From the IMG/VR virus record IMGVR_UViG_3300037010_001227, positions 62,001 through 126,000 of that record: a stretch of DNA of 64,000 bases; one strand, 5' to 3'. The translations under genes and the position numbers were made by a program. The notes under the pieces are model-generated. The model saw only the letters and a program-made list of their open reading frames with translations. It was not told the DNA's origin and made no database searches. Below are positions 184-61,853 of this stretch, piece by piece (position 1 is the first letter of the stretch; each line of letters starts with the position of its first letter).

Positions 184-270
184 TGGCGCGTAGTGAGAGA
201 TTTGAACTCCCGGTAGACTTTCATCGACGGATTACAAAACCGTTCCAATTGACCACTATGGGAACTACGC
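184..270 (-). tRNA. tRNA with UGU (Thr) anticodon and long variable arm
   Basis: Acceptor GCGTAGT/ACTACGC, G73, encoded CCA; anticodon arm ACGGT-TTTGTAA-TCCGT; 15-nt V region with GAT-GAAA-GTC hairpin; T-arm GGGAG-TTCAAAT-CTCTC. Confidence 0.85.
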
Positions 271-320
271 AAGTAAAAATCGCTCCCTGCCTTTGTCAGG
301 GTTTGCGCTCATGTTTGCGC

Positions 321-623
321 TCATGTTTGGTCATTATCTTGTTTATCAAGATTGATACCAAAACGAGCTGCTATCAATTTAATTACATCTTTCAACATTG
401 TAATACTATAACCACCAAGTACTAAATAAAATAAATAATCATTTACTTGACTAATATAGGTTAAAGTGTCAAAAATCTTCCATGGATTTACTGCAATACA
501 CCAATTTAATGTAATAAATGCTATAAACGCGGCGGTACTTATTACTCTTCCATAAGATGCATCAGTATTAGTACTATATACTTTTTTCCACCAATGTAAC
601 ATAAAATACCTAAACCTTACCAA
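321..623 (-). CDS. small two-TM membrane protein (holin-like size and topology)
   Basis: Two hydrophobic segments and a charged C-terminus; start may be the ATG at 602. Confidence 0.55.
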   Translation of the reverse strand: MVRFRYFMLHWWKKVYSTNTDASYGRVISTAAFIAFITLNWCIAVNPWKIFDTLTYISQVNDYLFYLVLGGYSITMLKDVIKLIAARFGINLDKQDNDQT

Positions 624-721
624 AACTTATTTAGAACTCTTCGATATCGGTATATCTTCATGGAAAAGCTATAGGTGTTTCTTTAAAGATTTTTGGAATC
701 TTTTAAAGAAGACCCCACACC

Positions 722-1798
722 CTAATGAGAACTGAATTGTCTAACCCAAACTTTAATAGATTTTTTCACATAAAAACGTAGTTTAATCAAATTTAATAAC
801 TGAATAATTCTAAAGTTACGTAAAAACCAAACCCTGTTCATTACTTTAACAATATCTTTTGTAGACGTTGGATCAGCTTTTGCAAAATTACTTACCCAAG
901 AAACTTCTGGGGACACAACAATTGGTAATTCTGACATTACCATGTCCGCTGATACAATATTAAAAGTTTCAGTAAAAGATACTTGCATACCCATATCCAT
1001 ATCTTTTATAAATTCTAAAAAATCATCATGAGATAACCATTCATGTGTTACTAAATGATGACGATAGGAATTTTTAAATAATCCTCTAAGATTATTTAAA
1101 GCTGGTTCACTTTTATTTTCTATTCTGGTTCCATTAATATGGAAATAAAGAGTCAACTGGTTTTTATCTGCAAATTCTATAGCTGCTATAGCTTGTGTTA
1201 AGTGATTTTTCAAATGTCTAACAGCACCAAAACACATTATATGAATTTCATTCTCTCTATCTCTGAATCTTACATAAGGTTCATAAAATTCCATAGGATA
1301 ACAATTAGGCAGATATAAAACTTTTTTGTCTATTTTTGATTCATCCCAATAAGGGTGGGCAGATTTAACAATAGTTTTGATATCATGGTAACTGCGCTTT
1401 GAATTACCAGAAACAGAAACATTATCGTAACCTACGTATCGTGAAATCCAATCCATAGCCATACCTTCAGTTGCTAAGAAAGGCATTTCACTATGATTTC
1501 TAATAATCCACTGTACTTTAGGATGAAGTTTATGAAGAATCTCAAATTTTTCTGGGACTACCCAAAAGGCTTCTATAACTACATGAGTAGGTTTATACTC
1601 TGTCACTAGTCTATCAATACAATTATTATCAATAGCATGAACAACTTTTACAGAAAAACCTTTTTTTCTCAAAGCATCTGCAACAAAGTTAGCACTATTT
1701 ACTAACCCAGATGACAATCCAGTTCTACAACTATATGTAGAGTTACCATAAGAGTCTTCTCTAAATTTTAAAATAAATAAAATTTTTGCCATTTCCAT
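722..1798 (-). CDS. GT-B fold glycosyltransferase (GT4-like)
   Basis: C-terminal SFTETFNIVSADMV nucleotide-sugar motif, FGAVRHLKNH strand, two-domain 358-aa size. Confidence 0.75.
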   Translation of the reverse strand: MEMAKILFILKFREDSYGNSTYSCRTGLSSGLVNSANFVADALRKKGFSVKVVHAIDNNCIDRLVTEYKPTHVVIEAFWVVPEKFEILHKLHPKVQWIIRNHSEMPFLATEGMAMDWISRYVGYDNVSVSGNSKRSYHDIKTIVKSAHPYWDESKIDKKVLYLPNCYPMEFYEPYVRFRDRENEIHIMCFGAVRHLKNHLTQAIAAIEFADKNQLTLYFHINGTRIENKSEPALNNLRGLFKNSYRHHLVTHEWLSHDDFLEFIKDMDMGMQVSFTETFNIVSADMVMSELPIVVSPEVSWVSNFAKADPTSTKDIVKVMNRVWFLRNFRIIQLLNLIKLRFYVKKSIKVWVRQFSSH

Positions 1799-1817
1799 TT
1801 CAGCCTCATATTAATGC

Positions 1818-1894
1818 TGTAGCGGGTTAAGAAATTTGAATTCTTATCGTAAGTTTGGTAGACTTTCATGCTAACTGTTGAACATCACACTCGC
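1818..1894 (-). tRNA. degenerate tRNA-Gly(ACC), possibly a pseudogene
   Basis: AAGT-CTACCAA-ACTT anticodon arm, T-arm AAGAA-TTCAAAT-TTCTT, U73; two acceptor mismatches and ACA instead of CCA. Confidence 0.6.
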
Positions 1895-1900
1895 ATAAAC

Positions 1901-2125
1901 TTAAACTTCCTTTAAAAACTCTCTTACTTCATCAGCATAACTTCTAACAATTTTTTGAATGATTAATGTTTGACCTTCATGAGAACAGCTATTAAAGAAA
2001 TGTTTAAACTCTTCTAATTCCTGATCCATACTTTTGGGAACTGCATAAATAGTTTTACCAAATTTATCAGTTGTTTTTACTGTGTCAATATAATCATTAG
2101 GATGGGTATAATCTTCAGTAGTCAT
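1901..2125 (-). CDS. hypothetical protein (MTTEDYTHP...)
   Basis: ORF track; start moved to 2125 because the 5' extension overlaps tRNA-Ser. Confidence 0.6.
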   Translation of the reverse strand: MTTEDYTHPNDYIDTVKTTDKFGKTIYAVPKSMDQELEEFKHFFNSCSHEGQTLIIQKIVRSYADEVREFLKEV

Positions 2126-2146
2126 AAAAGTCTCTAAAACTAATTC

Positions 2147-2236
2147 AGGCGGAAAACAAGAGGATCGAACTCTCATGCCCTTTCAGGTATCTTGTTTAGT
2201 AAACAAGTGCAACAAACCAGTATTTGCCTGTTTTCC
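2147..2236 (-). tRNA. tRNA-Ser(ACT), class II
   Basis: GGAAAAC/GTTTTCC acceptor, G73, CTTGT-TTACTAA-ACAAG anticodon arm, long V-arm, TTCGATC loop; ends CCT. Confidence 0.85.
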
Positions 2237-2241
2237 ATAAA

Positions 2242-2422
2242 TGACGGGCCGTTTAATCCCGTCTCTCCTTGTCGGTCATGACTCCGACTCATCTTGTAAT
2301 TTCAAGAATGCTTAATCTATGTAAGAACGTATAACACAAATCAATTATCTAGTTAGCTAGCATTTTCAATAATTGAAAACGAACTTGATTACAGCGGTTC
2401 AAACAGGAAGATCGAGGAAACC
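2242..2422 (-). ncRNA. candidate structured ncRNA, rod-like, about 180 nt
   Basis: Nested long-range complementarity (2384-2393 with 2295-2306; 2359-2364 with 2307-2312; partial end-to-end pairing) plus local hairpins; no ORF. Confidence 0.35.
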
Positions 2423-2432
2423 TATAATTTAA

Positions 2433-3029
2433 TTATAGTAGTTTCAGCCCTTTTATACGAAAAATGTCACCAAAGTTGTTCATCAGAGCTAAAGCAGTTA
2501 CTCGGTTATCTAAATCAGGTTCACTCCATTCTGTATAAAAATCAAACCTACAACTATCATAGCGTTGAAGAATCTGTTTAAGACTCTGAGAACCTTCCGG
2601 TGTTAATAATATAATCGTACCATTAGTCCAAGGCGCTAATGGATGCTCTTTCTGAAATTGAGCAACAGCATGAGCTGACTGAACTGCTTTCTGTGACTCA
2701 GATAAAGTCTCATCACAAATAATATAAAGCTTCTTTGCACCTGGATTGTTAAAATACTCTTTCCAAGTATCAATACGCTCACGTAATTTATCACTCAAAT
2801 CACGTAATCTATGTTCATATGCCTTACTGGCATTTTTTGATATAACTTCAATTGGACCTTTGTGAGTCCTATACTTGCTACGTAATTCTGACATAGCTAT
2901 ATGAAGTGCTCTATACTGAACCGTATTAGTTCCAGCGTAGGTTTTAAGTAACAGTTTAGCCTTTTTCCAAGCTTCTTTTTGTTCAGCAGTGAAATTAGGA
3001 CGAGTTTTAATAGTAGTTTCGATAGCCAT
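2433..3029 (-). CDS. PTH2-like peptidyl-tRNA hydrolase domain protein with N-terminal extension
   Basis: C-terminal QKAVQSAHAVAQF...WSEPDLDNRVTALAL pattern of phage PTH2-like proteins; SD AAGGAG before the ATG at 3029. Confidence 0.7.
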   Translation of the reverse strand: MAIETTIKTRPNFTAEQKEAWKKAKLLLKTYAGTNTVQYRALHIAMSELRSKYRTHKGPIEVISKNASKAYEHRLRDLSDKLRERIDTWKEYFNNPGAKKLYIICDETLSESQKAVQSAHAVAQFQKEHPLAPWTNGTIILLTPEGSQSLKQILQRYDSCRFDFYTEWSEPDLDNRVTALALMNNFGDIFRIKGLKLL

Positions 3030-3036
3030 TTGATGG

Positions 3037-3143
3037 TCTCCTTGAAAAATTGGCACTTTATAAAGGTGTAACTCTTCACAAGATCAAGGCGATCTACTTA
3101 CAACCTAAAGATGATTAAAGCTCATAAACATGATGTTACTCCT
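3037..3143 (-). promoter_or_regulatory. leader peptide MFMSFNHL* (3105-3131) with putative translational attenuator of the PTH2-like gene
   Basis: SD AGGAGT 6 nt before the uORF ATG; AGATC/GATCT hairpin competes with anti-SD TCGCCTTGA pairing to TCAAGGAGA (8 of 9 bp). Confidence 0.5.
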
Positions 3144-3155
3144 AATATATAATTC

Positions 3156-3229
3156 TGGTGTTTCTGACAGGAATTGAACCCGTATAAACTATTTTAGAGA
3201 TAGCTGCTCTACCGTTGAGCTACAGAAAC
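3156..3229 (-). tRNA. amber suppressor tRNA (CTA anticodon)
   Basis: GTTTCTG/CAGAAAC acceptor, A73, CCA; GCTAT-CTCTAAA-ATAGT anticodon arm; canonical D- and T-arms. Confidence 0.9.
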
Positions 3230-3319
3230 ATTTTATAGATGATAAAACCAGGGAGGTTAGCCTCGCCAATACCTGCGGTTTTATATTCCGCTATTCTATA
3301 TAGAAAGAGCTATATTAAT

Positions 3320-3410
3320 TGGCGGCAGGTGTCCGATTCGAACGGACGAAACGCTTTCACGTTTGGATGTTTTCAAGACATCTGGGTTGTAACCACTTCC
3401 CTAACCTGCC
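3320..3410 (-). tRNA. tRNA-Ser(TGA)
   Basis: GATGT-CTTGAAA-ACATC, long V-arm, G73, CCA. Confidence 0.95.
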
Positions 3411-3510
3411 TATAGTTCTTCTTTACCGTAATGTTGTAACACATGACAATTAGAACAAATCAATTGTAAGTTATCCAAATCATTTGTGCCAATGTTACAG
3501 GTTTCTACTA
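3411..3510 (-). pseudogene. C-terminal fragment of an HNH endonuclease
   Basis: Translates as GTNDLDNLQLICSNCHVLQHYGK; no intact 5' part. Confidence 0.6.
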
Positions 3511-3541
3511 TATAATAAACAACTAAGTTTTTAGTTGATTA

Positions 3542-3784
3542 TCATACTTCCTCAACTCTAAATTGATTTTTAGCTGGAACCCAACCACCGCGTTTATGCC
3601 TATATTCAATAAAATTATCAATCCAATCATGTGCCTCTAAAGAGGTTTCAAATTCCCAGTACTCCATAGTTGGAGGAATTGGATCAAATATTGGCATTCC
3701 CAACAAATCATATTGCCAACCTAAGACTTTAGGTAGATAACATTCGCCAAATGGTTGTCCTAAGTTAGTCCAAATTCTATACAT
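3542..3784 (-). CDS. hypothetical protein
   Basis: ORF track, co-oriented with the tRNA array. Confidence 0.65.
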   Translation of the reverse strand: MYRIWTNLGQPFGECYLPKVLGWQYDLLGMPIFDPIPPTMEYWEFETSLEAHDWIDNFIEYRHKRGGWVPAKNQFRVEEV

Positions 3785-3797
3785 ATAATCCTCAAAA

Positions 3798-3871
3798 TGG
3801 TTGGGAAGCTAGGAGTTGAACCTAGGCTAAGACTTTCAAAGAGTCCGGTGCTACCGTAACACTTCTTCCCA
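3798..3871 (-). tRNA. tRNA-Gln(TTG)
   Basis: T1-A72 acceptor TGGGAAG/CTTCCCA, GGACT-CTTTGAA-AGTCT, CCA. Confidence 0.9.
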
Positions 3872-3877
3872 ATAATA

Positions 3878-4171
3878 TTAATCTACTTGCTCATAAGTAG
3901 CTGTAAAGATATCTGGTTTACAAGGATAAATCTCACCAAAAGCACCTTTAATAATCCAATCATTCCAAGAAACCAAAAGATTACCTTCCAGCGTTCCAAT
4001 AGAAAGAGTTCCATCCCTAGTCCCAGCTTCTGTAGGAAATAAGGAACCTTCTGTTCCTCGTTCTAATTGCCAAGCTTGATTTAACCAAGAAGGCCAATCC
4101 GTATTACTTGCTCTACGTTCTTTAGTCATTTGAAATGCTTCAATGACCACTGGTTTCTTTCGAAATTTCAT
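3878..4171 (-). CDS. conserved phage protein (KFRKKPVVIEA...WIIKG..GE.YPCKPDIF family)
   Basis: Recognisable widespread phage family motif; SD GAGGA. Confidence 0.8.
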   Translation of the reverse strand: MKFRKKPVVIEAFQMTKERRASNTDWPSWLNQAWQLERGTEGSLFPTEAGTRDGTLSIGTLEGNLLVSWNDWIIKGAFGEIYPCKPDIFTATYEQVD

Positions 4172-4208
4172 ATCGTCCTCTACATTATATCGGACTGAAT
4201 AAAAATTT

Positions 4209-4721
4209 CTAAACCTCTTTCAACATCTGTGGGCCTTTTACGATTCCACGATCTTGGAAGAATGAAATATACTTTTTAGTTTCTTCTGGGGCATTTTTAA
4301 GACCTTTTCTGATAACATTTCCACGACCCCAATTATATGCTGCCAAAGCTTCAGAATAGTTTCCAAATGTATCAAGTAAAGATTTTAATGTTTTAGCTGC
4401 CCACTCTGCTGCTTCTAGTGGATTAAATGGATCTCCATTAAATCCACTAATATGTGCTGGCATAATCTGAAATAAACCCTTCGCCCCTCGCTGGGATTTA
4501 GCATGAGGATTTCCCTTTGACTCAATTTCAATCATATGCTTGAGAATACCTGGAGCTAATCCATATGCCTTCTCTAATGAATTCAATCCTAATTTAGCAT
4601 ACCAAACATCAGGTGATTCCTGCTGTTTGTGCGTAATTGCAGGAGGCATTGTTGTAGTTTGGTGAATCTGTTCTTGAATAATATATTGTGATTTAATAAA
4701 TTCTTCTAGTTTTAATGACAT
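4209..4721 (-). CDS. soluble lytic transglycosylase (SLT domain)
   Basis: IESKGNPHAKSQRGAKGLFQIMP and ALAAYNWG motifs. Confidence 0.9.
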   Translation of the reverse strand: MSLKLEEFIKSQYIIQEQIHQTTTMPPAITHKQQESPDVWYAKLGLNSLEKAYGLAPGILKHMIEIESKGNPHAKSQRGAKGLFQIMPAHISGFNGDPFNPLEAAEWAAKTLKSLLDTFGNYSEALAAYNWGRGNVIRKGLKNAPEETKKYISFFQDRGIVKGPQMLKEV

Positions 4722-4743
4722 ATAAATCTCTACTATTTAGTTC

Positions 4744-4830
4744 TGATGCGAGAATTGGGAGTGGAACCCACACATCACAAGGATATCACTTTCTAAGAAT
4801 GAAACGTCGAGCTAGGTCTGCCATTCTCGC
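4744..4830 (-). tRNA. tRNA-Leu(TAG) with aberrant T-loop
   Basis: GCGAGAA/TTCTCGC, A73, TCATT-CTTAGAA-AGTGA, V-arm; T-loop TTCCACT; no CCA. Confidence 0.75.
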
Positions 4831-4832
4831 AT

Positions 4833-4917
4833 GGGTGCTGATTACAGGAATCGAACCTGGTTACTTTCACGCCAGATTTACAGTCTGGTACCAAGTCCAG
4901 TAGAGAGCAGAATCAGC
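4833..4917 (-). tRNA. tRNA-Tyr(GTA)
   Basis: GCTGATT/AATCAGC, A73, CCAGA-CTGTAAA-TCTGG, V-arm, TTCGATT loop; weak D-stem. Confidence 0.85.
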
Positions 4918-4920
4918 AAA

Positions 4921-4948
4921 TAAAAAGGCCCTAAACTAATAGGGCCTA
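4921..4948 (-). terminator. intrinsic terminator immediately 5' of tRNA-Tyr
   Basis: AGGCCCT/AGGGCCT stem followed by a T run on the minus strand. Confidence 0.65.
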
Positions 4949-4968
4949 GTATAGGATATTTAGTTCGC

Positions 4969-5130
4969 TTAACTGATAGGAGTCTTGTCAATATAACCAG
5001 AAGTTTGTTGCCAAGAAATTTCCCGATTTAACTCTACTTGAGTAGGAGTCAGTGGAGTAAAAATATCAGCTGGAACTTCATATTGAAGTTTAAGGGGATC
5101 TTCTTTATCTAGTAGATAGGTTTGTGACAT
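4969..5130 (-). CDS. 53-aa hypothetical protein (MSQTYLLDKEDPLK...)
   Basis: Hand translation; SD GAGGT; below the ORF-track size cutoff. Confidence 0.6.
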   Translation of the reverse strand: MSQTYLLDKEDPLKLQYEVPADIFTPLTPTQVELNREISWQQTSGYIDKTPIS

Positions 5131-5202
5131 GGTTAGAATACCTCTATAATTTAGTTAAACTTAATTTACTTAATTATTCAAGTAAAATAAGATTTTATTT
5201 TT

Positions 5203-5280
5203 TGGTGGATCTTGTCGGTAACGATCCGACCTGTATTCTCCTTGCAAAAGAGACAACCACCCCGTGCAGTTCCAAGACCC
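5203..5280 (-). tRNA. tRNA-Ala(TGC)
   Basis: G3.U70 pair, TCTCT-TTTGCAA-GGAGA, A73, CCA; T-loop ATCGTTA. Confidence 0.9.
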
Positions 5281-5284
5281 AAAA

Positions 5285-5880
5285 TTATTTGTGTTTTATG
5301 TATCTACTACTGTCAGTAAGAAAATGTATCTCTTCATGACAGGTAGGCACAAAATTTGAAGATTTTCAATACTATTGTTTGTTCTGTCTTTATCTATACG
5401 ATAAACAATTAACAATTCCGGTAACTTATCATATCCGCAATTATTACAGTTATTTGTATTATTTCTTTTTCTATTTCTCTGTAACTATAATCTCCACTTT
5501 TAAAATCTATTCTAACTAATAAATTTCGTTCAGTTTGTTTAGCTAAATCACAACATTTATGAGAACAAAAATGTAGTCCAGATTTTTTAGAATCAAATAA
5601 TTTACTAATATAATAAGATTTTCCACATAATGAACAAACACAATTATGTGGCTTGTCTTATTTTGTAAACAGCTTATTATATAACAATATGTGCAAGATT
5701 TACAACAAAACTTAGCTCTCACTCTATTAAGTTATTTATTTTCAGCTTCAATATATCTTGCAATATAAACATTTTACAATAGTTTTTGATATATTGGCAG
5801 ATATCCTTTGTATTTATTTACAAAGAAGACAGACCATCCACTAAATAAAAGTTTACAGTCAAATACACAAACTTCTACAA
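5285..5880 (-). pseudogene. decayed HNH endonuclease with N-terminal Cys-rich repeats
   Basis: Fragments CSLCGKSY..FCSHKC, CNNCGYDK..LIVYRIDKDRTNNSIENLQILC(fs)PTCHEEIH, broken by stops and frameshifts. Confidence 0.75.
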
Positions 5881-5907
5881 AAGTCTACCAAGATTAACCT
5901 GGTTAAT

Positions 5908-5982
5908 TGGTCGGAGTAGGAGAGATCGAATCTCCGGCTTCCTGTATCCAAAACAGGCTGTCTACCACTGACTTACACTCCG
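5908..5982 (-). tRNA. tRNA-Pro(TGG)
   Basis: C1-G72, CCTGT-TTTGGAT-ACAGG, A73, CCA. Confidence 0.95.
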
Positions 5983-6043
5983 TATTTTAACATATTATCA
6001 CATATGTTGGGGAAGAACCTAACGCTTCAAATGTGAAGGTTAC

Positions 6044-6119
6044 AGGTTGCCCAAAGTAGGATTGAACTACTAACCTCACGATTATCGGTCGTGCGCTCTA
6101 CCAGTTGAGCTATTAGGCA
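6044..6119 (-). tRNA. tRNA-Ile(GAT) with C33
   Basis: CACGA-CCGATAA-TCGTG; TGCCTAA/TTGGGCA acceptor. Confidence 0.85.
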
Positions 6120-6122
6120 ATA

Positions 6123-6197
6123 TGGTGGGCTAGATTAGTATCGTCTAACCTCTCGGGATTTTCAGTCCACGCGCTAATACATCTCAGCTACTAACCC
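6123..6197 (-). tRNA. tRNA-Phe(GAA) with degenerate T-loop
   Basis: GGGTTAG/CTAGCCC, A73, CCA, CTGAAAA loop; weak anticodon stem; T-loop ACGATA. Confidence 0.75.
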
Positions 6198-6227
6198 ATA
6201 AAATAAACCATTATTTGATTTTCAAAC

Positions 6228-6406
6228 AACAAAAAACCCGCTTTTTTTTGGCGGGTTCTTGTGAAAGGAGCAAAGATGAAGCTTTATGAACAAGAACCCG
6301 CTCTAGTATGAATGGAGAAAATTGCTGGGCTAAATTGGGCATAAAAACTACGACCAACGTTGTCGTTAGTTGCAAGTAGTGATGTCTGTCCAACTTGAAA
6401 GTTCAT
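6228..6406 (-). promoter_or_regulatory. leader-peptide transcription attenuator upstream of tRNA-Phe/Ile/Pro
   Basis: 40-aa uORF 6284-6406; 12-bp antiterminator (6290-6301 with 6251-6262) mutually exclusive with terminator (6251-6257 with 6235-6241 plus U run). Confidence 0.65.
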
Positions 6407-6465
6407 ACAATTAATTCCTATTTGTATACTGGTGGATAGGAAGAAAACTTAAGATATTTATTTTT

Positions 6466-6540
6466 TGGTGCGCCCGGAGGATCTCGAAACCTCAACCCTT
6501 TCGTTAAAAGCGAAATGCTCTTCCTTTGAGCTACGGGCAC
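6466..6540 (-). tRNA. tRNA-Lys(TTT)
   Basis: TTTCG-CTTTTAA-CGAAA, A73, CCA; T53/T61 mismatch at the T-stem closing pair. Confidence 0.85.
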
Positions 6541-6544
6541 AGAA

Positions 6545-6770
6545 TAATGACAGAGATAACCTTGAAGTATTATGTCCAAACTGCCATTCATTAATAGATA
6601 CTTGAAGAGGTAAAACCAAGGAAATTCAAAACAAGGAAAATACCATACCATACCAGATGATACTTTAATTGAGGCACTAAAAGCAACTGAAACAGTAGGA
6701 CAAGTAGGTATTGTAGTAAGATTATCTCCCAAAGGTAATAACTATGTTAGAGCAAAGAGATACATGTAAA
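6545..6770 (+). pseudogene. HNH endonuclease fragments, antisense to the tRNA array
   Basis: DNLEVLCPNCHSLIDT*RGK, then (frameshifted) TLIEALKATETVGQVGIVVRLSPKGNNY. Confidence 0.6.
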
Positions 6771-6781
6771 CGTTACTAATT

Positions 6782-6864
6782 TGGCTGAGGATATTGGAAT
6801 CGAACCAATCAGGTCAAAGACGAAAGCTTAACAGGCTTTTGTACCACCACTGTACTAATCCTCA
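6782..6864 (-). tRNA. tRNA-Asn(GTT) with extended variable arm
   Basis: TGAGGAT/ATCCTCA, G73, CCA; AAAGC-CTGTTAA-GCTTT; 13-nt V region with GTC-TTT-GAC hairpin. Confidence 0.9.
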
Positions 6865-29642: not shown

Positions 29643-30312
29643 ACCAATACAGATTGTTATTTCAGTAGTTATAGCTGCAGCTCTTGCGGCTTTTACGGTT
29701 TCTTATGTTAAAGACCAGAGTTGGAAGAGGACTGTTGAAAGTAAAACACAACAAATTCAACTTTTAGAAGAGTCTGTTGCTAAGAAAAATATGGAAATTG
29801 CTGCATTAAATATAAAGATTGGTGAAGCGACTATTGCTACAGCTGAAGCTACCAAAATTGCTAAGAATGCTCAGGCTAATACAAATGAGCTACTTAAAAA
29901 ATGGAAAGAACTACAAGCGCAATTACACCCAAATATTCCACCTGATTCACTGCCATCTATTCCACCAGTAGAAAGTGATTATACACCTATCGCTAATATA
30001 ACTACTTTAACTGACTGCACAAAGACTTTAGAAGCAGAGAGAAAACAATGCACTGAAGAAAAGACTGTATTAGTTGAAGAGATTGTTGCGGATAGAAATC
30101 TTATCACAACAGTTACAACAGAGAAAGACTTGATCTCTCAAAAAGCTGATATTCTTACTACTGAAGTAACTGGCTTAAAAGAAATTAAAACAGAGCAGGA
30201 AGTTATTATTGATACCCAAGGTAAACAAATAAAATCTGAAGTTCGAAGAAAGAAGATTTATAGAGGCGCGTCTGGCATCTTGGCCCTGATAGTCACTGTT
30301 TTATTACTTTAG
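29614..30312 (+). CDS. membrane-anchored coiled-coil protein (spanin-like architecture)
   Basis: N-terminal TM, two coiled coils around a Pro-rich hinge, C-terminal hydrophobic tail. Confidence 0.55.
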   Translation: MTPTSLILSKPIQIVISVVIAAALAAFTVSYVKDQSWKRTVESKTQQIQLLEESVAKKNMEIAALNIKIGEATIATAEATKIAKNAQANTNELLKKWKELQAQLHPNIPPDSLPSIPPVESDYTPIANITTLTDCTKTLEAERKQCTEEKTVLVEEIVADRNLITTVTTEKDLISQKADILTTEVTGLKEIKTEQEVIIDTQGKQIKSEVRRKKIYRGASGILALIVTVLLL

Positions 30313-50527: not shown

Positions 50528-52738
50528 ATGTATACAAGCAAGAAATCACTTAAGAGAGTTTCTATACGGTCTATTGTGCCTTATAGCACAAGTTTGTATA
50601 TAAACAGAGATGAATTACTTGTTTTAACTCCAGGCGAAATTGTCCCGTATGATGATTTTGTTGATTCCGATATTGAGAGTTCTGGATATAACTTAGATTT
50701 GATTGAAGGTTATATTAGAGAAAAGATTATTACTGTATTAAATGAAGAAACCTCTGATTTAGTCTTAGTTGAAGATGACGATATTGTTCTAAACCCAAAT
50801 ACAAATATTCCGCAAAGTCCTCCAATTAAAATAAGCACTGATGTATTCAAATGTTTATACTTGAATTCAGTTGCTACCGCTTCTGTAACTACATATGATA
50901 ATGCAACATATACTTGGAAGATTTCCAATGGAATAATTATATCTGGTCAAGGAACTTTTACCATTAAGTTTACAGCTACAGTAGCTGGACTTCCTGTAGT
51001 TTTATCTTGTGCTGTTGTTACTGATAACATAACTAGAAATGCATCTGCTACAATTTTAGGTAGTAATGTATTACCAGCACCCATCCCAGTTACAATTTCA
51101 ATTACTCCTGATAACGTAGAAGTAACACAAAATACATCTATAACCTTAGCTGCACATGTTACTGGAAATGCTAACACTAATGTAACTTGGTATGCTTCAG
51201 CAGGAACTTTCGTTGAAGGCCCAAATAATACAATTGTATATACTGCACCAGATAACGATGGTATTTATAGTGTAACTGCGACTAGCGTAGCAGATCCAAC
51301 TAAAATGGCTAGTGCTAAGATCAATTGCACTAAAGTAGAAATCTCATTATTACCATCCTCATCTAAATCTGTTCAGGTATTGGATACATTACAATACACA
51401 GCTATTGTAAAAGGAACAATAGATCCAACAGTAACTTGGACTGTTGATGAAATTCCTAATGGTAATTTAACGGTAGGAACTATTATTGGTTCTGGAAATA
51501 CTATTAATTACATGGCTCCATACTTTACTGGAACTCATACAATAAAAGCTACCAGTGCTGTTAATCCTACTAAATATGCCGCTGCAACGATTACATGTGT
51601 CCATGCTCCTGTATTAGATGTATCCATATTCCCTTCAAACACTTCTATACAAGTTTCTACATCTTTACAAATGACTGCCAACGTCACTGTAGGAGGTCCA
51701 GGAAGCACAGATGTTATCTGGAAAGTAAATGGAGTTCTTTATGGAACTGCTGAAACCGGAACTATAAGTGTGAGTAGTAATAGTAATTTTGTAGTATATC
51801 ATGCTCCATCTATTCCAGGAACATATGAAATTACTGCAGTTAGCGTTATAGATCCAACTAAATATTTCACTTCCACAGTTGTTTGCACAGCCGTACCTGT
51901 TGTAGCAGTCACATTAACTCCTGCCACACCAGTAAATACCTTTGTAGATGGCTCATTAGCATTTGATGCTGTTGTTACTAATGCTGTTGATACCTCAGTT
52001 GTTTGGAAAGTAAATAACGTTGTCCATGGTAATGAAACTGTAGGAACAATAACGACTGGAGTTGCAAACACTTGCACATATAATGCTCCTTCTACTCCAG
52101 GTATCTATACAATTTCTGCAACAAGTGTAGCAGATCCGACTAAATATGCATCTACTACTATTGTTTGTTCTACTATTCCAATTACAGTTACTGTATTACC
52201 AGCAACAGCAAATGTTCTCTTGTCTGATACACTTCGATTAACAGTTGATGTAACAGGAACTGGTAGCCATAATGTAATTTGGACCGTAGATGGTATAGTA
52301 GATGGTAATACTACTGTAGGTTCAATTAGTTACAGCGAAGGAACTATATGGTATATAGCACCAGAAACTAAAGGTGTTCATGTTATTAAAGCAACTAGTG
52401 TGGAAGACGATTCTAAATTTGATTCTACCATAGTCACTTGTTCAGAAGTAGTAGATATTCAGGTTACTCTAACTCCTAATGGAATACAACATATTCCAGT
52501 TATGACTAGTTTAGAATTTACAGCTGAAGTAACTGGAACTTCTAATACAGTAGTAACTTGGACTGTTAATGGTGTTGCAAATGGTAATGCTACATTAGGA
52601 ACAATTACTTCATTTGCTGGTAACACACAGACATATACAGCACCTTCAACAGGCGGCACAAGAACAATTACTGTAACAAGTGTTGCAGATCCTACTAAGA
52701 GTGCATCAACTACTGTTGACTGCATATTACAATCTTAG
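50528..52738 (+). CDS. Ig-like (Big-type) tandem-repeat virion surface protein
   Basis: About six repeats of W.V.G...GN.T.GTI...Y.AP...G...I.ATSV.DPTK. Confidence 0.85.
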   Translation: MYTSKKSLKRVSIRSIVPYSTSLYINRDELLVLTPGEIVPYDDFVDSDIESSGYNLDLIEGYIREKIITVLNEETSDLVLVEDDDIVLNPNTNIPQSPPIKISTDVFKCLYLNSVATASVTTYDNATYTWKISNGIIISGQGTFTIKFTATVAGLPVVLSCAVVTDNITRNASATILGSNVLPAPIPVTISITPDNVEVTQNTSITLAAHVTGNANTNVTWYASAGTFVEGPNNTIVYTAPDNDGIYSVTATSVADPTKMASAKINCTKVEISLLPSSSKSVQVLDTLQYTAIVKGTIDPTVTWTVDEIPNGNLTVGTIIGSGNTINYMAPYFTGTHTIKATSAVNPTKYAAATITCVHAPVLDVSIFPSNTSIQVSTSLQMTANVTVGGPGSTDVIWKVNGVLYGTAETGTISVSSNSNFVVYHAPSIPGTYEITAVSVIDPTKYFTSTVVCTAVPVVAVTLTPATPVNTFVDGSLAFDAVVTNAVDTSVVWKVNNVVHGNETVGTITTGVANTCTYNAPSTPGIYTISATSVADPTKYASTTIVCSTIPITVTVLPATANVLLSDTLRLTVDVTGTGSHNVIWTVDGIVDGNTTVGSISYSEGTIWYIAPETKGVHVIKATSVEDDSKFDSTIVTCSEVVDIQVTLTPNGIQHIPVMTSLEFTAEVTGTSNTVVTWTVNGVANGNATLGTITSFAGNTQTYTAPSTGGTRTITVTSVADPTKSASTTVDCILQS

Positions 52739-53558: not shown

Positions 53559-53834
53559 ATGACATTACCAGAATTACAAGTAGAGATTAAAAGATATATT
53601 CTTGACCGTCCAGGAGTCTTTACAGGTAAAAGGTTGAATGCCTATAATATAGGTGTTTATACCTAGTATATTAGAATCTTAGAAAATATCAGTTCTAGTC
53701 ACGTTCAACATAGTATTAAGTATATAAACTTGACAATAAATCAATTAATGGAATACAAAACAAATAGATGGAGAGAACTTATCAGCGCAAGGTTACTCTC
53801 CATTTCTATTCGGAAAGATATAGTAGTAGATTAA
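53559..53834 (+). pseudogene. 91-codon ORF interrupted by a single in-frame TAG (53664-53666)
   Basis: Hand translation. Confidence 0.35.
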
Positions 53835-53936: not shown

Positions 53937-54125
53937 ATGACGGTCTATAAGCTCTTTACAAGTGAGAATAAGTATGTAGGCGAAATAGAATGCACTTCAC
54001 CCGAAGAGGCTATAACTATGTTCCGTATGCTAACGGGTGACCTATTTGATTCAGCTACTTTAGCGGCTAAAGTAAAGACTGACAGACGTAAGACCCCTAG
54101 AAAGGGTTGGAACTTGCTGCGGTAG
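53937..54125 (+). CDS. hypothetical protein
   Basis: SD AGGTG; ORF track. Confidence 0.65.
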   Translation: MTVYKLFTSENKYVGEIECTSPEEAITMFRMLTGDLFDSATLAAKVKTDRRKTPRKGWNLLR

Positions 54126-56650: not shown

Positions 56651-57499
56651 GAATTTAATTCCTGGCAATAGATGTTCATAATATTTCTAAAGGTTATATA
56701 ACTATAATCAGGGAATTATCTACATAAAACAGACCATAGGTGATTTTATATACTTCGGTAGTAGTTCTACAGATAATTTGTTTTGTATATGTTTACTATT
56801 GCATCTACTAATAGACCAGTAATGTTTAGTACTCAATTAGACGCTGACTACTATCTTGATATTGATAAAATACTGATTCGTAATAGACTGTACAATGATG
56901 ATACAGATACTATACAGATACTATAATAACACCAATATGTAGAGGAGAGTTTGTAATAGTATTGTGTTAATCCAAAGAAGAAGTTAAGAAAAAGCTGGAG
57001 TAGTAAATCAATTAATAAGTTTAACGAGTAATAAGATAAATCCAACCAAAAAGGAATAATACAGGATTACATTAATAAGTCTACCGGCATATACCTACAT
57101 AATCTATTTATAGTATAGTACATCAGTAACACCACCTGGTAATATATAATATAACTATTATAGACCTATCAAAAGTACGATATCTTGAGATTAAATATTA
57201 GTACTACACATGTCTCATAAGTAGAGAAATGAATTCAAATAACACTAAATTTATTAGTATAATTTCTTTAAAATAGGATTTGATTTTATGTGACATTCTA
57301 GTACAATACGATTTAACATCTACAGGATTAGATATCTAATCCTATTAGAACTGTTGATGATTTATATAGATACGAAACTCTTGTAGAAATTTTTAAACCT
57401 TTGGTAGAGATAACCTATAGCGCGCCAAGTTTTGAAGGGTTTATTAAAATAAGAATGTAAGGTTAAAAAAATTATCTACTGTTATTTCAGTACTTCCAA

Positions 57500-58234: not shown

Positions 58235-58822
58235 ATGGCTCTTATCAAGACTGTCTCTCTCTGCGGGCTGACCTGCAACGTCGAAACCAACGACGACAAA
58301 GAGAAGGAAAGTGTTTCCTTCGTTTTCCCCGAACTGACTTTCGAGAAGGGGGTCAGGGGCTCGAAGGAAAAGGAAATCAAGACTGTTTCCATCGGCAAGC
58401 GCAGTTTCAATGCGGTGCTTGATCTTTTCGAGCTGGTGAAGGACCCCGCCAGCAGGGCCGCTATCTCCGATGGCAAGCTGAAGGAATTGAGCCCGGTTCT
58501 TTACAAGGCCGTGATCAATTCGGGGAATGATCCCGAAGAGTTTTACCTCTCTGCTGGCAGTATCATTGCAGAGATGGAATCTGAGGAAGAGAATCTTTCT
58601 GCAAGCAATCCCAACAACATTGCAGCCCGTGCCATTGCTTCCGTGTTTACCATGGAAGATACGGCGGAATCCTGCAATCCGCAGGATCTTCTCCAGAAGT
58701 TTATGGAGAAGCTGGACATGGCAGAAGTGAAGAAACTTCTGTCCAAGTTTGAGGAACTGGGACGGTTCGATGATGGGAGTCTCAGGACCCGCAAGCAGAA
58801 GGCAACCTCGAAGGCCGCGTAA
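58235..58822 (+). CDS. hypothetical protein with GC-rich codon usage
   Basis: SD AAGGGG; visibly higher GC3 than neighbouring genes. Confidence 0.75.
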   Translation: MALIKTVSLCGLTCNVETNDDKEKESVSFVFPELTFEKGVRGSKEKEIKTVSIGKRSFNAVLDLFELVKDPASRAAISDGKLKELSPVLYKAVINSGNDPEEFYLSAGSIIAEMESEEENLSASNPNNIAARAIASVFTMEDTAESCNPQDLLQKFMEKLDMAEVKKLLSKFEELGRFDDGSLRTRKQKATSKAA

Positions 58823-59003
58823 CACCTGGAGTAATAGCCGGGACTCAGTAATGGGTTCCGGCTATTGCTTTGTCTATTTTTAGGATGTTTGTTATGTAAC
58901 ATACATCCTGGTTTTAATTCATTAGATACATTCGCATTCTTAAAATACATCCAGGTATCTATACAGTATTAGATACACCGAGGTATTTTAACAATGTGGT
59001 TTT

Positions 59004-60523: not shown

Positions 60524-60853
60524 ATGTCAGCAAACCAGCAGGATATGTTCTACAGTATTCTCAGCGGTAGTGGATTTCTTACCACTACCCAAGCTGAAGA
60601 ATTGGCTGAAAAATGTGCCAATTCTGTTCAGCATTTCACGGATGACCAGGACCCGTTTCCTGTTCTTTACGAGGATAGGAATGTGGTTATCTATACCAAT
60701 GGGTCCAACGAAATCTTCATTAAGGAGAAGAACACACTCTCCGAAATGAGGATGAATTTCGACAACGGGATTCAGTTCACGGCCCAGGGTCACTACGTGG
60801 AACCATACTCCACCAATGGTTTAATTGGTTGGAGGGTGAAGAAGCGGAAGTAG
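60524..60853 (+). CDS. hypothetical protein
   Basis: Start moved downstream of the GGAGG SD; GC3-rich codons. Confidence 0.75.
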   Translation: MSANQQDMFYSILSGSGFLTTTQAEELAEKCANSVQHFTDDQDPFPVLYEDRNVVIYTNGSNEIFIKEKNTLSEMRMNFDNGIQFTAQGHYVEPYSTNGLIGWRVKKRK

Positions 60854-61690: not shown

Positions 61691-61853
61691 TACTATTAAG
61701 GTTCCAGTTCATAGATTTCATAGATAGTCTTTCATCCTGGATATTCTAAATATATCCAGGCTAAAGGACTATTAATCCTATGGAGGGTTAAATGTAGAAA
61801 GTAAAACTTCTTTGTTACAATAGATGTATCTGATTTTTGGTAGTATTATTAAT

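What the first reader, a model, noticed from the sequence alone, without database searches (positions are those of the whole stretch)
3156..3229. Intact amber suppressor tRNA in a genome that still uses TAG as a stop
This is one of the most canonical tRNAs in the array. No long gene here has in-frame TAG, and several genes end in TAG, so this is not full recoding. Some TAG stops are doubled (TAG-TAG at 60851 and 61118, TAG-TAA at 30310, TAG-TGA at 54123), as expected if amber is leaky. Candidate targets: two leader uORFs, the 53559-53834 ORF with one TAG, and the ATG-TAG minigene at 61792.
Basis: partly seen in the sequence, partly recalled or inferred. Interest (0 to 1): 0.6.

Follow-up and report, generated by a model that had tools for sequence, protein, structure and literature searches.

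The report
Phage amber tRNA paired with hydrolase
A real stop-codon-reading (CUA) tRNA sits in a 213-kb standard-code phage, and it is one half of a widely conserved two-gene unit whose other half is a peptidyl-tRNA-hydrolase-like protein, which suggests that such "suppressor" tRNAs do something other than change the genetic code.

Summary
Window 3156-3229 (-) is a canonical tRNA with anticodon CUA (Rfam 68.4 bits, best of its array). The 213,189-bp phage genome reads in the standard code, and about 20% of its genes end in TAG.

- Back-up stops are no commoner after TAG than after TAA or TGA (Fisher p 0.55-0.87).
- Two of the four "doubled stops" lie in copies of one repeated intergenic element.
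- Orthologues end where TAG is.
- The proposed targets are at chance level and not conserved.
- The genome has no release-factor gene and no Glu/Gln, Trp/Tyr or Lys/Asp/Asn-type aaRS gene.

New finding: the gene 126 nt downstream on the same strand (3029-2433, 198 aa, no Pfam) has a C-terminal PTH2 peptidyl-tRNA-hydrolase fold (Z 10-11). In IMG/VR, 70 of 80 loci encoding this domain carry a tRNA(CUA) on the same strand, at a median gap of 258 nt. Three large phage genomes with the pair use the standard code. A related phage without the tRNA also lacks the protein. Lak megaphages pair the domain with a tRNA(UUA).

I read this as a two-part unit in which the hydrolase acts on the stop-reading tRNA. 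The exact mechanism is inferred, not shown.

The parts
3156..3229 (-). tRNA with anticodon CUA (reads UAG). It is class I, with G1-C72, U2-A71, A73, encoded CCA and the A36-A37-A38 loop context.
   Evidence: ARAGORN. Rfam tRNA 68.4 bits. An identical copy lies in a second metagenome contig, L006.
2433..3029 (-). Gene for a 198-aa protein (P0121). It has an N-terminal four-helix part (about residues 15-94) and a C-terminal PTH2-fold domain (residues 97-198). The start ATG at 3029 is preceded by AAGGAG at 3043-3038.
   Evidence: - No Pfam or PDB sequence hit; weak match to phrog_3668 'hydrolase'.
- AlphaFold2 (AF2) model: pLDDT 89, pTM 0.82.
- Foldseek: the top 13 hits are PTH2 or PTH2-like structures.
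- VIA-align: Z 10.2-11.3, rmsd 2.4-2.9 A over 96-100 residues.
- Atlas feature search: 28 of 30 nearest hits share the PF01981 (PTH2) family set; the listed clusters are mostly viral.
- Family of 68 protein clusters.
- Linkage to tRNA(CUA).
3030..3155 (-). 126-nt spacer between the tRNA and the partner gene. It holds an SD-led 8-codon ORF (ATG 3131, MFMSFNHL, TAG 3107-3105). That ORF is probably not a functional part.
   Evidence: Read from the sequence. The uORF is absent from the equivalent spacer of G007. Mini-ORFs ending in TAG are not enriched.
184..6864 (-). Context: a minus-strand tRNA array that has grown from an Asn-Lys-His array seen in relatives. It lies between the UvsX/gp32-like genes and the genes further downstream on the minus strand. 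It contains the tRNA(CUA)/PTH2-like pair, an SLT transglycosylase gene (4209-4721) and small ORFs.
   Evidence: ARAGORN and Rfam. Relatives L136, L200 and L201 have only Asn, Lys and His tRNAs at this site. More distant relatives have none here. SLT domain.

Best explanation
The tRNA is a functional, stop-codon-reading tRNA of a standard-code, T4-like jumbo phage. It is not a sign of code change. It is one half of a conserved, mobile two-gene unit; the other half is the PTH2-fold protein encoded 126 nt downstream on the same strand.

Shown:
- The tRNA is canonical.
- TAG works as a stop in this phage.
- The protein has the peptidyl-tRNA hydrolase 2 fold.
- Protein and CUA tRNA are neighbours on the same strand in about 88% of viral loci that encode the domain. 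These include three large standard-code phage genomes.

Inferred:
- The tRNA enters ribosomes at UAG in competition with host RF1.
- The PTH2-like protein cuts the ester bond on this tRNA, either peptidyl-tRNA(CUA) after read-through or drop-off, or aminoacyl-tRNA(CUA).
- UAG decoding by the tRNA is therefore coupled to release and recycling, or is kept in check.
- The phage thus gets its own way of handling UAG codons while keeping TAG as a usable stop.

Which ester is cut, which amino acid (if any) the tRNA carries, and what the phage gains are not known.
For: - tRNA quality and anatomy.
- Standard code in this genome.
- Orthologues end at the TAG. The 417-aa gene ends LLW-stop in L136, L201 and L202. 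The 150-aa and 352-aa genes match orthologue lengths.
- Partner fold.
- Linkage found from the protein side: 33/39 loci and 70/80 loci, all on the same strand, median gap 258 nt.
- Linkage found from the tRNA side: 20 of the 76 loci with a CUA tRNA, chosen by tRNA pattern alone, encode the domain beside the tRNA.
- Presence and absence:
  - G000, G007, G008, G009, G011 and G001 each have one domain gene beside their CUA tRNA(s).
  - The relative G003 (34 tRNAs) has neither.
- The pair sits at different genome places in G000 and G007, so it moves as a unit.
- G007, G008, G009 and G011 read in the standard code.
- Lak phages pair the domain with tRNA(UUA).
- No third conserved gene.
Against: - No expression or activity data: no RNA run holds the locus.
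- No HMMER-level match to Pfam PTH2, so family membership rests on fold and language-model features.
- The residue before the AVQ motif is variable (Q 25, K 5, R 3, S 1 of 34). From memory, this position corresponds to a catalytic Lys of archaeal Pth2. The domain could therefore bind rather than cleave.
- About 73% of CUA-tRNA loci chosen by tRNA pattern showed no domain within the locus. The pairing is therefore not universal for phage CUA tRNAs, or my profile is not sensitive enough.
- Gene neighbourhood shows linkage, not mechanism.
Confidence: 0.55

Rival explanations
1. Classic leaky amber suppression. The tRNA gives low-level read-through of TAG, the genome buffers this with back-up stops, and a few uORFs, minigenes or TAG-interrupted ORFs are the regulated targets.
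For: - The tRNA is canonical and has the A36-A37-A38 context typical of efficient UAG readers (the role of this context is from established knowledge).
- Next in-frame stops are close anyway, a median of 4 codons after TAG.
Against: - Back-up stops are not enriched after TAG compared with TAA or TGA.
- The doubled TAG-TAG stops lie in a repeated element.
- The candidate targets are at chance level or not conserved.
- No extension after TAG is conserved in relatives.
- It does not explain the conserved PTH2-like partner.
Confidence: 0.15
2. An early step towards TAG recoding, following the model of Borges et al. [quoted passage not shown]
For: - Standard-code relatives of recoded phages with a suppressor tRNA are described (10.1101/2021.08.26.457843, read).
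- The array lies at the upstream end of the ~70-kb minus-strand gene block; the first 60 kb of that block use mostly TAA.
- Lak phages, reported as TAG-recoded, carry the same protein domain.
Against: - TAG is not depleted. It ends 21% of ORFs of 150 aa or more here and 15% in G007, against 13% in the CUA-less relative G003.
- The pair persists across very divergent standard-code phages with 31-49% GC and in 51 of 53 loci without any local sign of TAG recoding. This looks like a stable state, not a transition.
Confidence: 0.12
3. Counter-defence or ribosome rescue unit. The PTH2-like enzyme frees ribosomes jammed after host nucleases or toxins damage tRNAs or mRNAs, as Iyer et al. 2021 proposed for jumbo-phage PTH2. 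The CUA tRNA serves this rescue, for example by resolving ribosomes stalled at UAG when RF1 is limiting or attacked, rather than serving suppression as such.
For: - PTH2 in jumbo phages has been linked to ribosome rescue (PMC7824862).
- The tRNA arrays of this phage and its relatives fit tRNA replacement.
- TAG remains a frequent stop in carriers.
Against: - There is no direct evidence for a host system that targets RF1 or UAG.
- This rival overlaps with the best explanation and differs mainly in the benefit it proposes.
Confidence: 0.13
4. A chance anticodon mutation or decaying tRNA gene with no function.
For: - The near-identical L006 gives no evolutionary information.
- Several neighbouring tRNA calls are marginal.
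Against: - It is the best-scoring tRNA of the array.
- CUA tRNAs with the same partner gene recur in at least 70 distinct viral loci.
- A related phage, G007, keeps a CUA tRNA with a similar acceptor and T arm (25 of 32 end positions) and compensated stem changes.
Confidence: 0.03

Closest known systems
Phage-encoded suppressor tRNAs of stop-codon-recoded phages (crAss-like, Lak, Agate, Jade; Borges et al., 10.1101/2021.08.26.457843)
   Same: A phage-borne tRNA with a stop-codon anticodon (CUA), encoded among standard-code genes. The paper also notes a standard-code relative that carries a suppressor tRNA.
   Different: - This genome and three other module-bearing genomes show no TAG recoding.
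- TAG is not depleted.
- There is no phage RF or aaRS 'code-change module'.
- The conserved partner is a PTH2-like protein. I found no mention of it in that paper or in the other papers searched.
PTH2 peptidyl-tRNA hydrolases (Pfam PF01981; archaeal Pth2, human Bit1/PTRH2; PDB 1xty, 3erj, 1q7s, 2zv3), and PTH2 genes noted in jumbo phages (Iyer et al. 2021, PMC7824862)
   Same: - The fold of residues 97-198 (Z 10-11).
- Similar motif layout: KLYxxxR-DL...AVQ..HA and ...EPD..N..TA.A, compared with the PTH2 motifs as I recall them.
- Found in jumbo phages.
   Different: - No HMMER hit to PF01981.
- The presumed catalytic Lys position is variable.
- The full-length subfamily has an extra N-terminal helical domain.
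- It is tightly linked to a stop-reading tRNA, which that paper does not mention ('suppressor' occurs 0 times).
tRNA-Pyl, the label ARAGORN gives it
   Same: Anticodon CUA only.
   Different: It has a normal D loop with GG, a normal T loop (TTCAATT), a 4-nt variable loop and a standard cloverleaf. True tRNA-Pyl lacks these features (established knowledge). It should not be filed as tRNA-Pyl.
Laboratory amber suppressors derived from tRNA-Trp or tRNA-Lys (E. coli Su7 and supF-type classes)
   Same: The loop CU-CUA-AA is one base away from the Trp (CCA) and Lys (CUU) loop contexts. It is a class I tRNA.
   Different: - It is a natural, conserved gene, not a mutant allele.
- It shows no clear sequence affinity to any sense isotype. 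The best match is 54/71 to a Met tRNA, against 56/71 to other CUA tRNAs.
- The amino acid it carries is unknown.

Membership tests
tRNA (Rfam RF00005) | Cloverleaf structure scoring above the family's gathering score | tested here: met
   68.4 bits against a cut-off of 29, full model 1-71. ARAGORN cloverleaf.
Amber suppressor tRNA | Anticodon CUA in a 7-nt loop with U33 and a purine at 37 | tested here: met
   Loop C-U-CUA-A-A.
Amber suppressor tRNA | Is aminoacylated and inserts an amino acid at UAG in vivo | not testable with these tools
   No RNA or proteome data. Identity elements are ambiguous: G1-C72, U2-A71, A73, no long arm, and no isotype affinity.
tRNA-Pyl | Atypical tRNA-Pyl architecture: small D loop without GG, 3-nt variable loop, no T-psi-C consensus | tested here: not met
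   Canonical D loop (AACGGTA) and T loop (TTCAATT), and a 4-nt variable loop.
TAG-recoded (code 15) phage | Coding density rises specifically when TAG is read as sense, and conserved genes carry in-frame TAG | tested here: not met
   - Coverage 77.3% in code 11, 80.7% with TAG as sense, 80.1% with TGA as sense.
- TAG-ended genes end where their orthologues end.
- The long TAG junctions are separate genes.
Code-change module (suppressor tRNA + aaRS + release factor; Borges et al.) | A phage-encoded RF1/RF2 or matching aaRS accompanies the suppressor tRNA | tested here: not met
   No RF-1 or PCRF domain and no tRNA-synt_1c, 1b or 2 in a genome that CheckV rates 95% complete.
PTH2 peptidyl-tRNA hydrolase (PF01981) | PTH2 alpha/beta fold | tested here: met
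   - VIA-align Z 10.2-11.3 to 1q7s, 1xty, 3erj, 1rlk, 1wn2 and 2zv3, covering the whole domain; the next unrelated hit has Z of 4.4 or less.
- All of the Foldseek top 13 are PTH2 or PTH2-like.
PTH2 peptidyl-tRNA hydrolase (PF01981) | Sequence match to the Pfam model | tested here: not met
   - No PF01981 hit even at E up to 10; the profile against PDB sequences found nothing.
- Indirect link only: the nearest Atlas clusters carry PF01981 in 26-31% of members.
PTH2 peptidyl-tRNA hydrolase (PF01981) | Catalytic residues and ester-hydrolase activity | tested here: inconclusive
   - Invariant Q, H and T, and near-invariant E and D, lie in positions resembling the PTH2 motifs.
- The position I recall as the catalytic Lys is mostly Q.
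- No residue-level structural alignment was available, and activity was not tested.

The most novel reading that the evidence does not exclude
The CUA tRNA and the PTH2-like protein together form an RNA-guided, RF1-independent way to end or rescue translation at UAG. The tRNA recognises the stop codon, and the dedicated hydrolase releases the chain from that tRNA (or keeps the tRNA deacylated). Standard-code jumbo phages could then keep TAG as a stop without depending on host RF1. In recoded phages such as Lak, the same pair would tune suppression.
Probability: 0.2. Interest if true: 0.9.

Novelty: new variant of a known kind. Interest (0 to 1): 0.62.

Why it matters
Stop-reading tRNAs in phages are usually read as tools or forerunners of genetic-code change. 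Here the tRNA sits in a phage that plainly uses TAG as a stop. It belongs to a two-gene unit with a peptidyl-tRNA-hydrolase-fold protein, and that unit recurs in dozens of unrelated large phages that also use the standard code.

If the pairing is functional, three things follow:
- It defines a new translation-related phage module.
- It gives a concrete partner protein to test for the many 'orphan' suppressor tRNAs.
- It may explain how suppression is controlled in recoded megaphages.

It also warns annotators that a CUA tRNA does not by itself indicate code 15.

Tried and rejected
- **Near relatives in GenBank phages:** none by megablast. UvsX is under 31% identical to any deposited phage.
- **Amino-acid identity of the tRNA by similarity to about 130 phage tRNAs:** no isotype stands out.
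- **Theta/HDV-like ribozyme or another known RNA next to the tRNA:** none in Rfam at E up to 1.
- **Promoter scan:** not above shuffles, 38 against 34.7.
- **Read-through fusions:** rejected.
  - The candidates were exonuclease|primase, 113 aa|DNA polymerase, and virion protein fragment|HNH.
  - The downstream genes have their own starts and are separate or distant genes in relatives.
- **Coding potential of extensions after TAG:** a few are positive (for example the 28 codons after the nucleotidyltransferase gene), but none aligns past the TAG in relatives.
- **TAG-specific avoidance in the first 60 kb of the minus-strand gene block:** rejected, because TAG and TGA are both replaced by TAA there.
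- **Autoregulation through a TAG stop on the partner gene:** rejected. Stops are TAA 50, TGA 12, TAG 6.
- **A third conserved gene in the module:** none.
- **Cultured carriers of this PTH2-like subfamily:** only Lak MAGs and one uncultured phage by tblastn. Sinorhizobium phage Phosso has a CUA tRNA, but no domain hit within the 3 kb I held.
- **Not used:** Read laying (no RNA runs) and complex prediction (no protein-protein claim is made).

Full report
**What the window is.** The window is bases 62,001-126,000 of a single 213,189-bp virus record with 34% G+C, rated 95% complete by CheckV.
- It has no near match among deposited phages.
- Metagenomic relatives with 50-87% identical UvsX form a clade of roughly 220-240-kb phages. 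They carry T4-type terminase, portal, prohead protease and Gp23 capsid genes.
- Identical or near-identical DNA occurs in microbial-mat and sediment metagenomes. No RNA run holds it.
- The window carries replication genes: a gp32-like protein, UvsX, a 5'-3' exonuclease, a DnaG-like primase and SbcC. It also carries a minus-strand tRNA array at 184-6864.

**The observation.**
- ARAGORN finds a 74-nt tRNA with anticodon CUA at 3156-3229 (-).
- Rfam's tRNA model scores it 68.4 bits (cut-off 29), the best of the array.
- It has a 7-bp acceptor stem (G1-C72, U2-A71), A73, an encoded CCA, a normal D loop with GG, a normal T loop, a 4-nt variable loop and the loop C-U-CUA-A-A.
- ARAGORN's label 'tRNA-Pyl' rests on the anticodon alone. 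The cloverleaf is ordinary and is not of the tRNA-Pyl type.
- The amino acid cannot be told. There is no long arm, which excludes bacterial Ser, Leu and Tyr types. No sense isotype resembles it more than other CUA tRNAs do.

**Genetic code.**
- ORFs of 100 aa or more cover 77.3% of the genome in code 11, 80.7% if TAG is sense and 80.1% if TGA is sense. There is no TAG-specific gain.
- A simple codon-usage gene caller of my own gives 276 genes with stops TAA 180, TAG 55 and TGA 41.
- TAG-ended genes end where their orthologues end:
  - The 417-aa gene ends ...LLW-stop in L136, L201 and L202.
  - The 352-aa exonuclease and the 150-aa gene match orthologue lengths.
- The four long in-frame TAG junctions are neighbouring genes with their own starts. 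In relatives, those with detectable homologues are separate genes, or lie 2.5 kb apart.
- There is no release-factor domain and no class Ic, Ib or IIb synthetase gene.

- A stop directly follows TAG in 10/55 genes, TAA in 28/180 and TGA in 6/41. No threshold or rank test separates TAG from the others (p 0.46-0.87).
- The TAG-TAG pairs at 60851 and 61118 are the first bases of two copies of a repeated intergenic hairpin followed by the SD element TCCTATGGAGG. The 'ATG-TAG minigene' at 61792 follows another copy.
- Only 9 SD-led intergenic mini-ORFs exist, and 2 of them end in TAG.
- The 8-codon ORF just after the tRNA is not conserved in a relative.
- TAG is not depleted. It ends 21% of long ORFs here and 15% in G007, against 13% in the CUA-less relative G003.

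**The partner gene.**
- A related phage fragment, G007 (UvsX 59% identical, standard code), has a single tRNA. It too has anticodon CUA, with a similar acceptor and T arm and compensated stem changes.
- Right after that tRNA lies a 49% identical homologue of the 198-aa gene that follows our tRNA (window 3029-2433).
- The pair sits in a different genome place in the two phages. G003, L136, L200 and L201, which lack a CUA tRNA in the DNA held, give no hit to the protein.
- The protein belongs to an unannotated family of 68 clusters.
- Its AF2 model is confident (pLDDT 89). Residues 97-198 superpose on PTH2 peptidyl-tRNA hydrolases:
  - All of the Foldseek top 13 are PTH2 or PTH2-like.
  - VIA-align gives Z 10.2-11.3 and rmsd 2.4-2.9 A over 96-100 residues.
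  - The next unrelated hit has Z of 4.4 or less.
- Language-model features place it among clusters, mostly viral in the rows listed, of which 26-31% of members carry PF01981.
- HMMER sees no Pfam or PDB match.

**How general the pairing is.**
- Starting from the protein, 33 of 39 IMG/VR loci carry a CUA tRNA on the same strand.
- A second scan used a C-domain alignment. Of its 80 loci, 70 do so. All 70 tRNAs are on the same strand, the median gap is 258 nt, and 54 of them lie downstream of the gene.
- CUA is by far the commonest anticodon in those loci (71 CUA tRNAs; the next anticodon has 14).
- Starting from the tRNA, I used loci matched by a D-arm and anticodon-loop pattern. Of the 76 that carry a CUA tRNA, 20 encode the domain beside it.
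- G008 (210 kb), G009 (313 kb) and G011 (362 kb) each have 40-49 tRNAs and one CUA tRNA, which is adjacent to their single domain gene. All three read in the standard code.
- Of 53 CUA-tRNA loci of 6 kb or more, only 2 show a local TAG-specific coding gain.
- Lak megaphages, described in the literature as TAG-recoded, have the domain 590-690 nt downstream of a tRNA(UUA).
- No third gene is conserved with the pair.

**Interpretation.** The linkage is strong. The mechanism is inferred.
- A PTH2-fold protein next to a stop-reading tRNA most simply acts on the ester bond of that tRNA.
- This would couple UAG decoding to release or recycling of the chain, or limit the charged pool.
- It would explain why carriers keep TAG as a normal stop and show no adaptation to read-through.
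- The position that I recall as the catalytic Lys of archaeal Pth2 is mostly Gln in this family, so a binding role cannot be excluded.
- Iyer et al. (PMC7824862) noted PTH2 in jumbo phages and proposed ribosome rescue, without mentioning suppressor tRNAs.
- I found no paper that links the two. The library covers open-access papers only.

**Verdict.** The feature is real. The 'leaky amber with back-up stops' reading is not supported. The tRNA is best described as part of a conserved tRNA(CUA)/PTH2-like module of large phages whose function is still to be tested.

Noticed in passing
window 59554-64552 (+): Eight copies of an intergenic element: an inverted-repeat hairpin followed by the SD-containing motif (T)CCTATGGAGG and a start codon. 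They sit between small plus-strand genes and next to tRNA-Leu and tRNA-Lys. One copy is followed only by ATG-TAG.
   Followed up: partly
L001:2430-3641 (-) = genome 22430-23641: A 183-aa ORF matches only the first ~90 residues of a 1106-position virion structural protein profile. It ends in TAG and is followed in frame by an HNH endonuclease gene with its own ATG. This looks like a structural gene interrupted by a homing endonuclease, possibly in an intron.
   Followed up: partly
L002:3155-5757 (+) = genome 193155-195757: The family A DNA polymerase seems split. A 622-aa ORF holds the 3'-5' exonuclease and only the first third of the polymerase domain. A 245-aa ORF without Pfam hits follows, overlapping it by ATGA.
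   Followed up: no
window 184-270, 2148-2236, 4747-4917, 5203-5280, 6126-6197, 6782-6864 (-): There are odd tRNAs in the array.
- A Thr(UGU) of 87 nt has a long variable arm and G73.
- An Asn(GUU) is 83 nt long.
- Ser(ACU) and Ala(UGC) are called by ARAGORN only.
- Leu(UAG)-like and Tyr(GUA)-like elements score below threshold (26 bits).
- One extra Rfam tRNA hit (31 bits) is not called by ARAGORN.
   Followed up: partly
window 4209-4721 (-): An SLT-domain lytic transglycosylase gene sits inside the tRNA array, 1 kb upstream of the CUA tRNA, and ends in TAG. In a 24-locus subclade of other phages, a lysozyme-like gene lies just upstream of the PTH2-like gene.
   Followed up: no
G001 (L009, L011-L018): 56944-57096 and 58581-58958: This is a 155-kb fragment of a much larger phage (26.6% G+C, CheckV 22% complete). 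It has two tandem CUA tRNAs whose D and anticodon arms are identical to ours. The PTH2-like gene lies 1.5 kb upstream. The fragment reads in the standard code.
   Followed up: partly
G009:212903-213223 (+); G011:55271-55588 and 51923-52204 (-): Two module-bearing jumbo phages also encode short RF-1-domain proteins, with open frames of 195, 173 and 108 aa. In G009 this gene lies about 10 kb from the tRNA(CUA)/PTH2-like pair.
   Followed up: no
L215:1494-1569 (Sinorhizobium phage Phosso, PV764938.1 171983-172058): An isolated 469-kb phage has a CUA tRNA annotated only as 'tRNA-OTHER'. It lies between genes annotated as cysteinyl- and seryl-tRNA synthetase. No PTH2-like hit was found in the 3 kb held.
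   Followed up: partly
L237:3604-3694; L248:3793-3866; L235:3908-3982; L301:1841-1913: Variants of the partner tRNA next to the PTH2-like gene:
- anticodon UUA (L237 and the Lak phages);
- a 74-nt class I tRNA with anticodon UAA (L248, L249);
- one tRNA with an 8-nt loop read as 'ctaa' (L235).
   Followed up: no
whole genome G000; G007; G008: TAG is used as a stop more often than TGA in the module-bearing genomes G000 (29 against 18), G007 (7 against 2) and G008 (34 against 29). It is used less often in the CUA-less relative G003 (20 against 25). The numbers are too small to test.
   Followed up: partly
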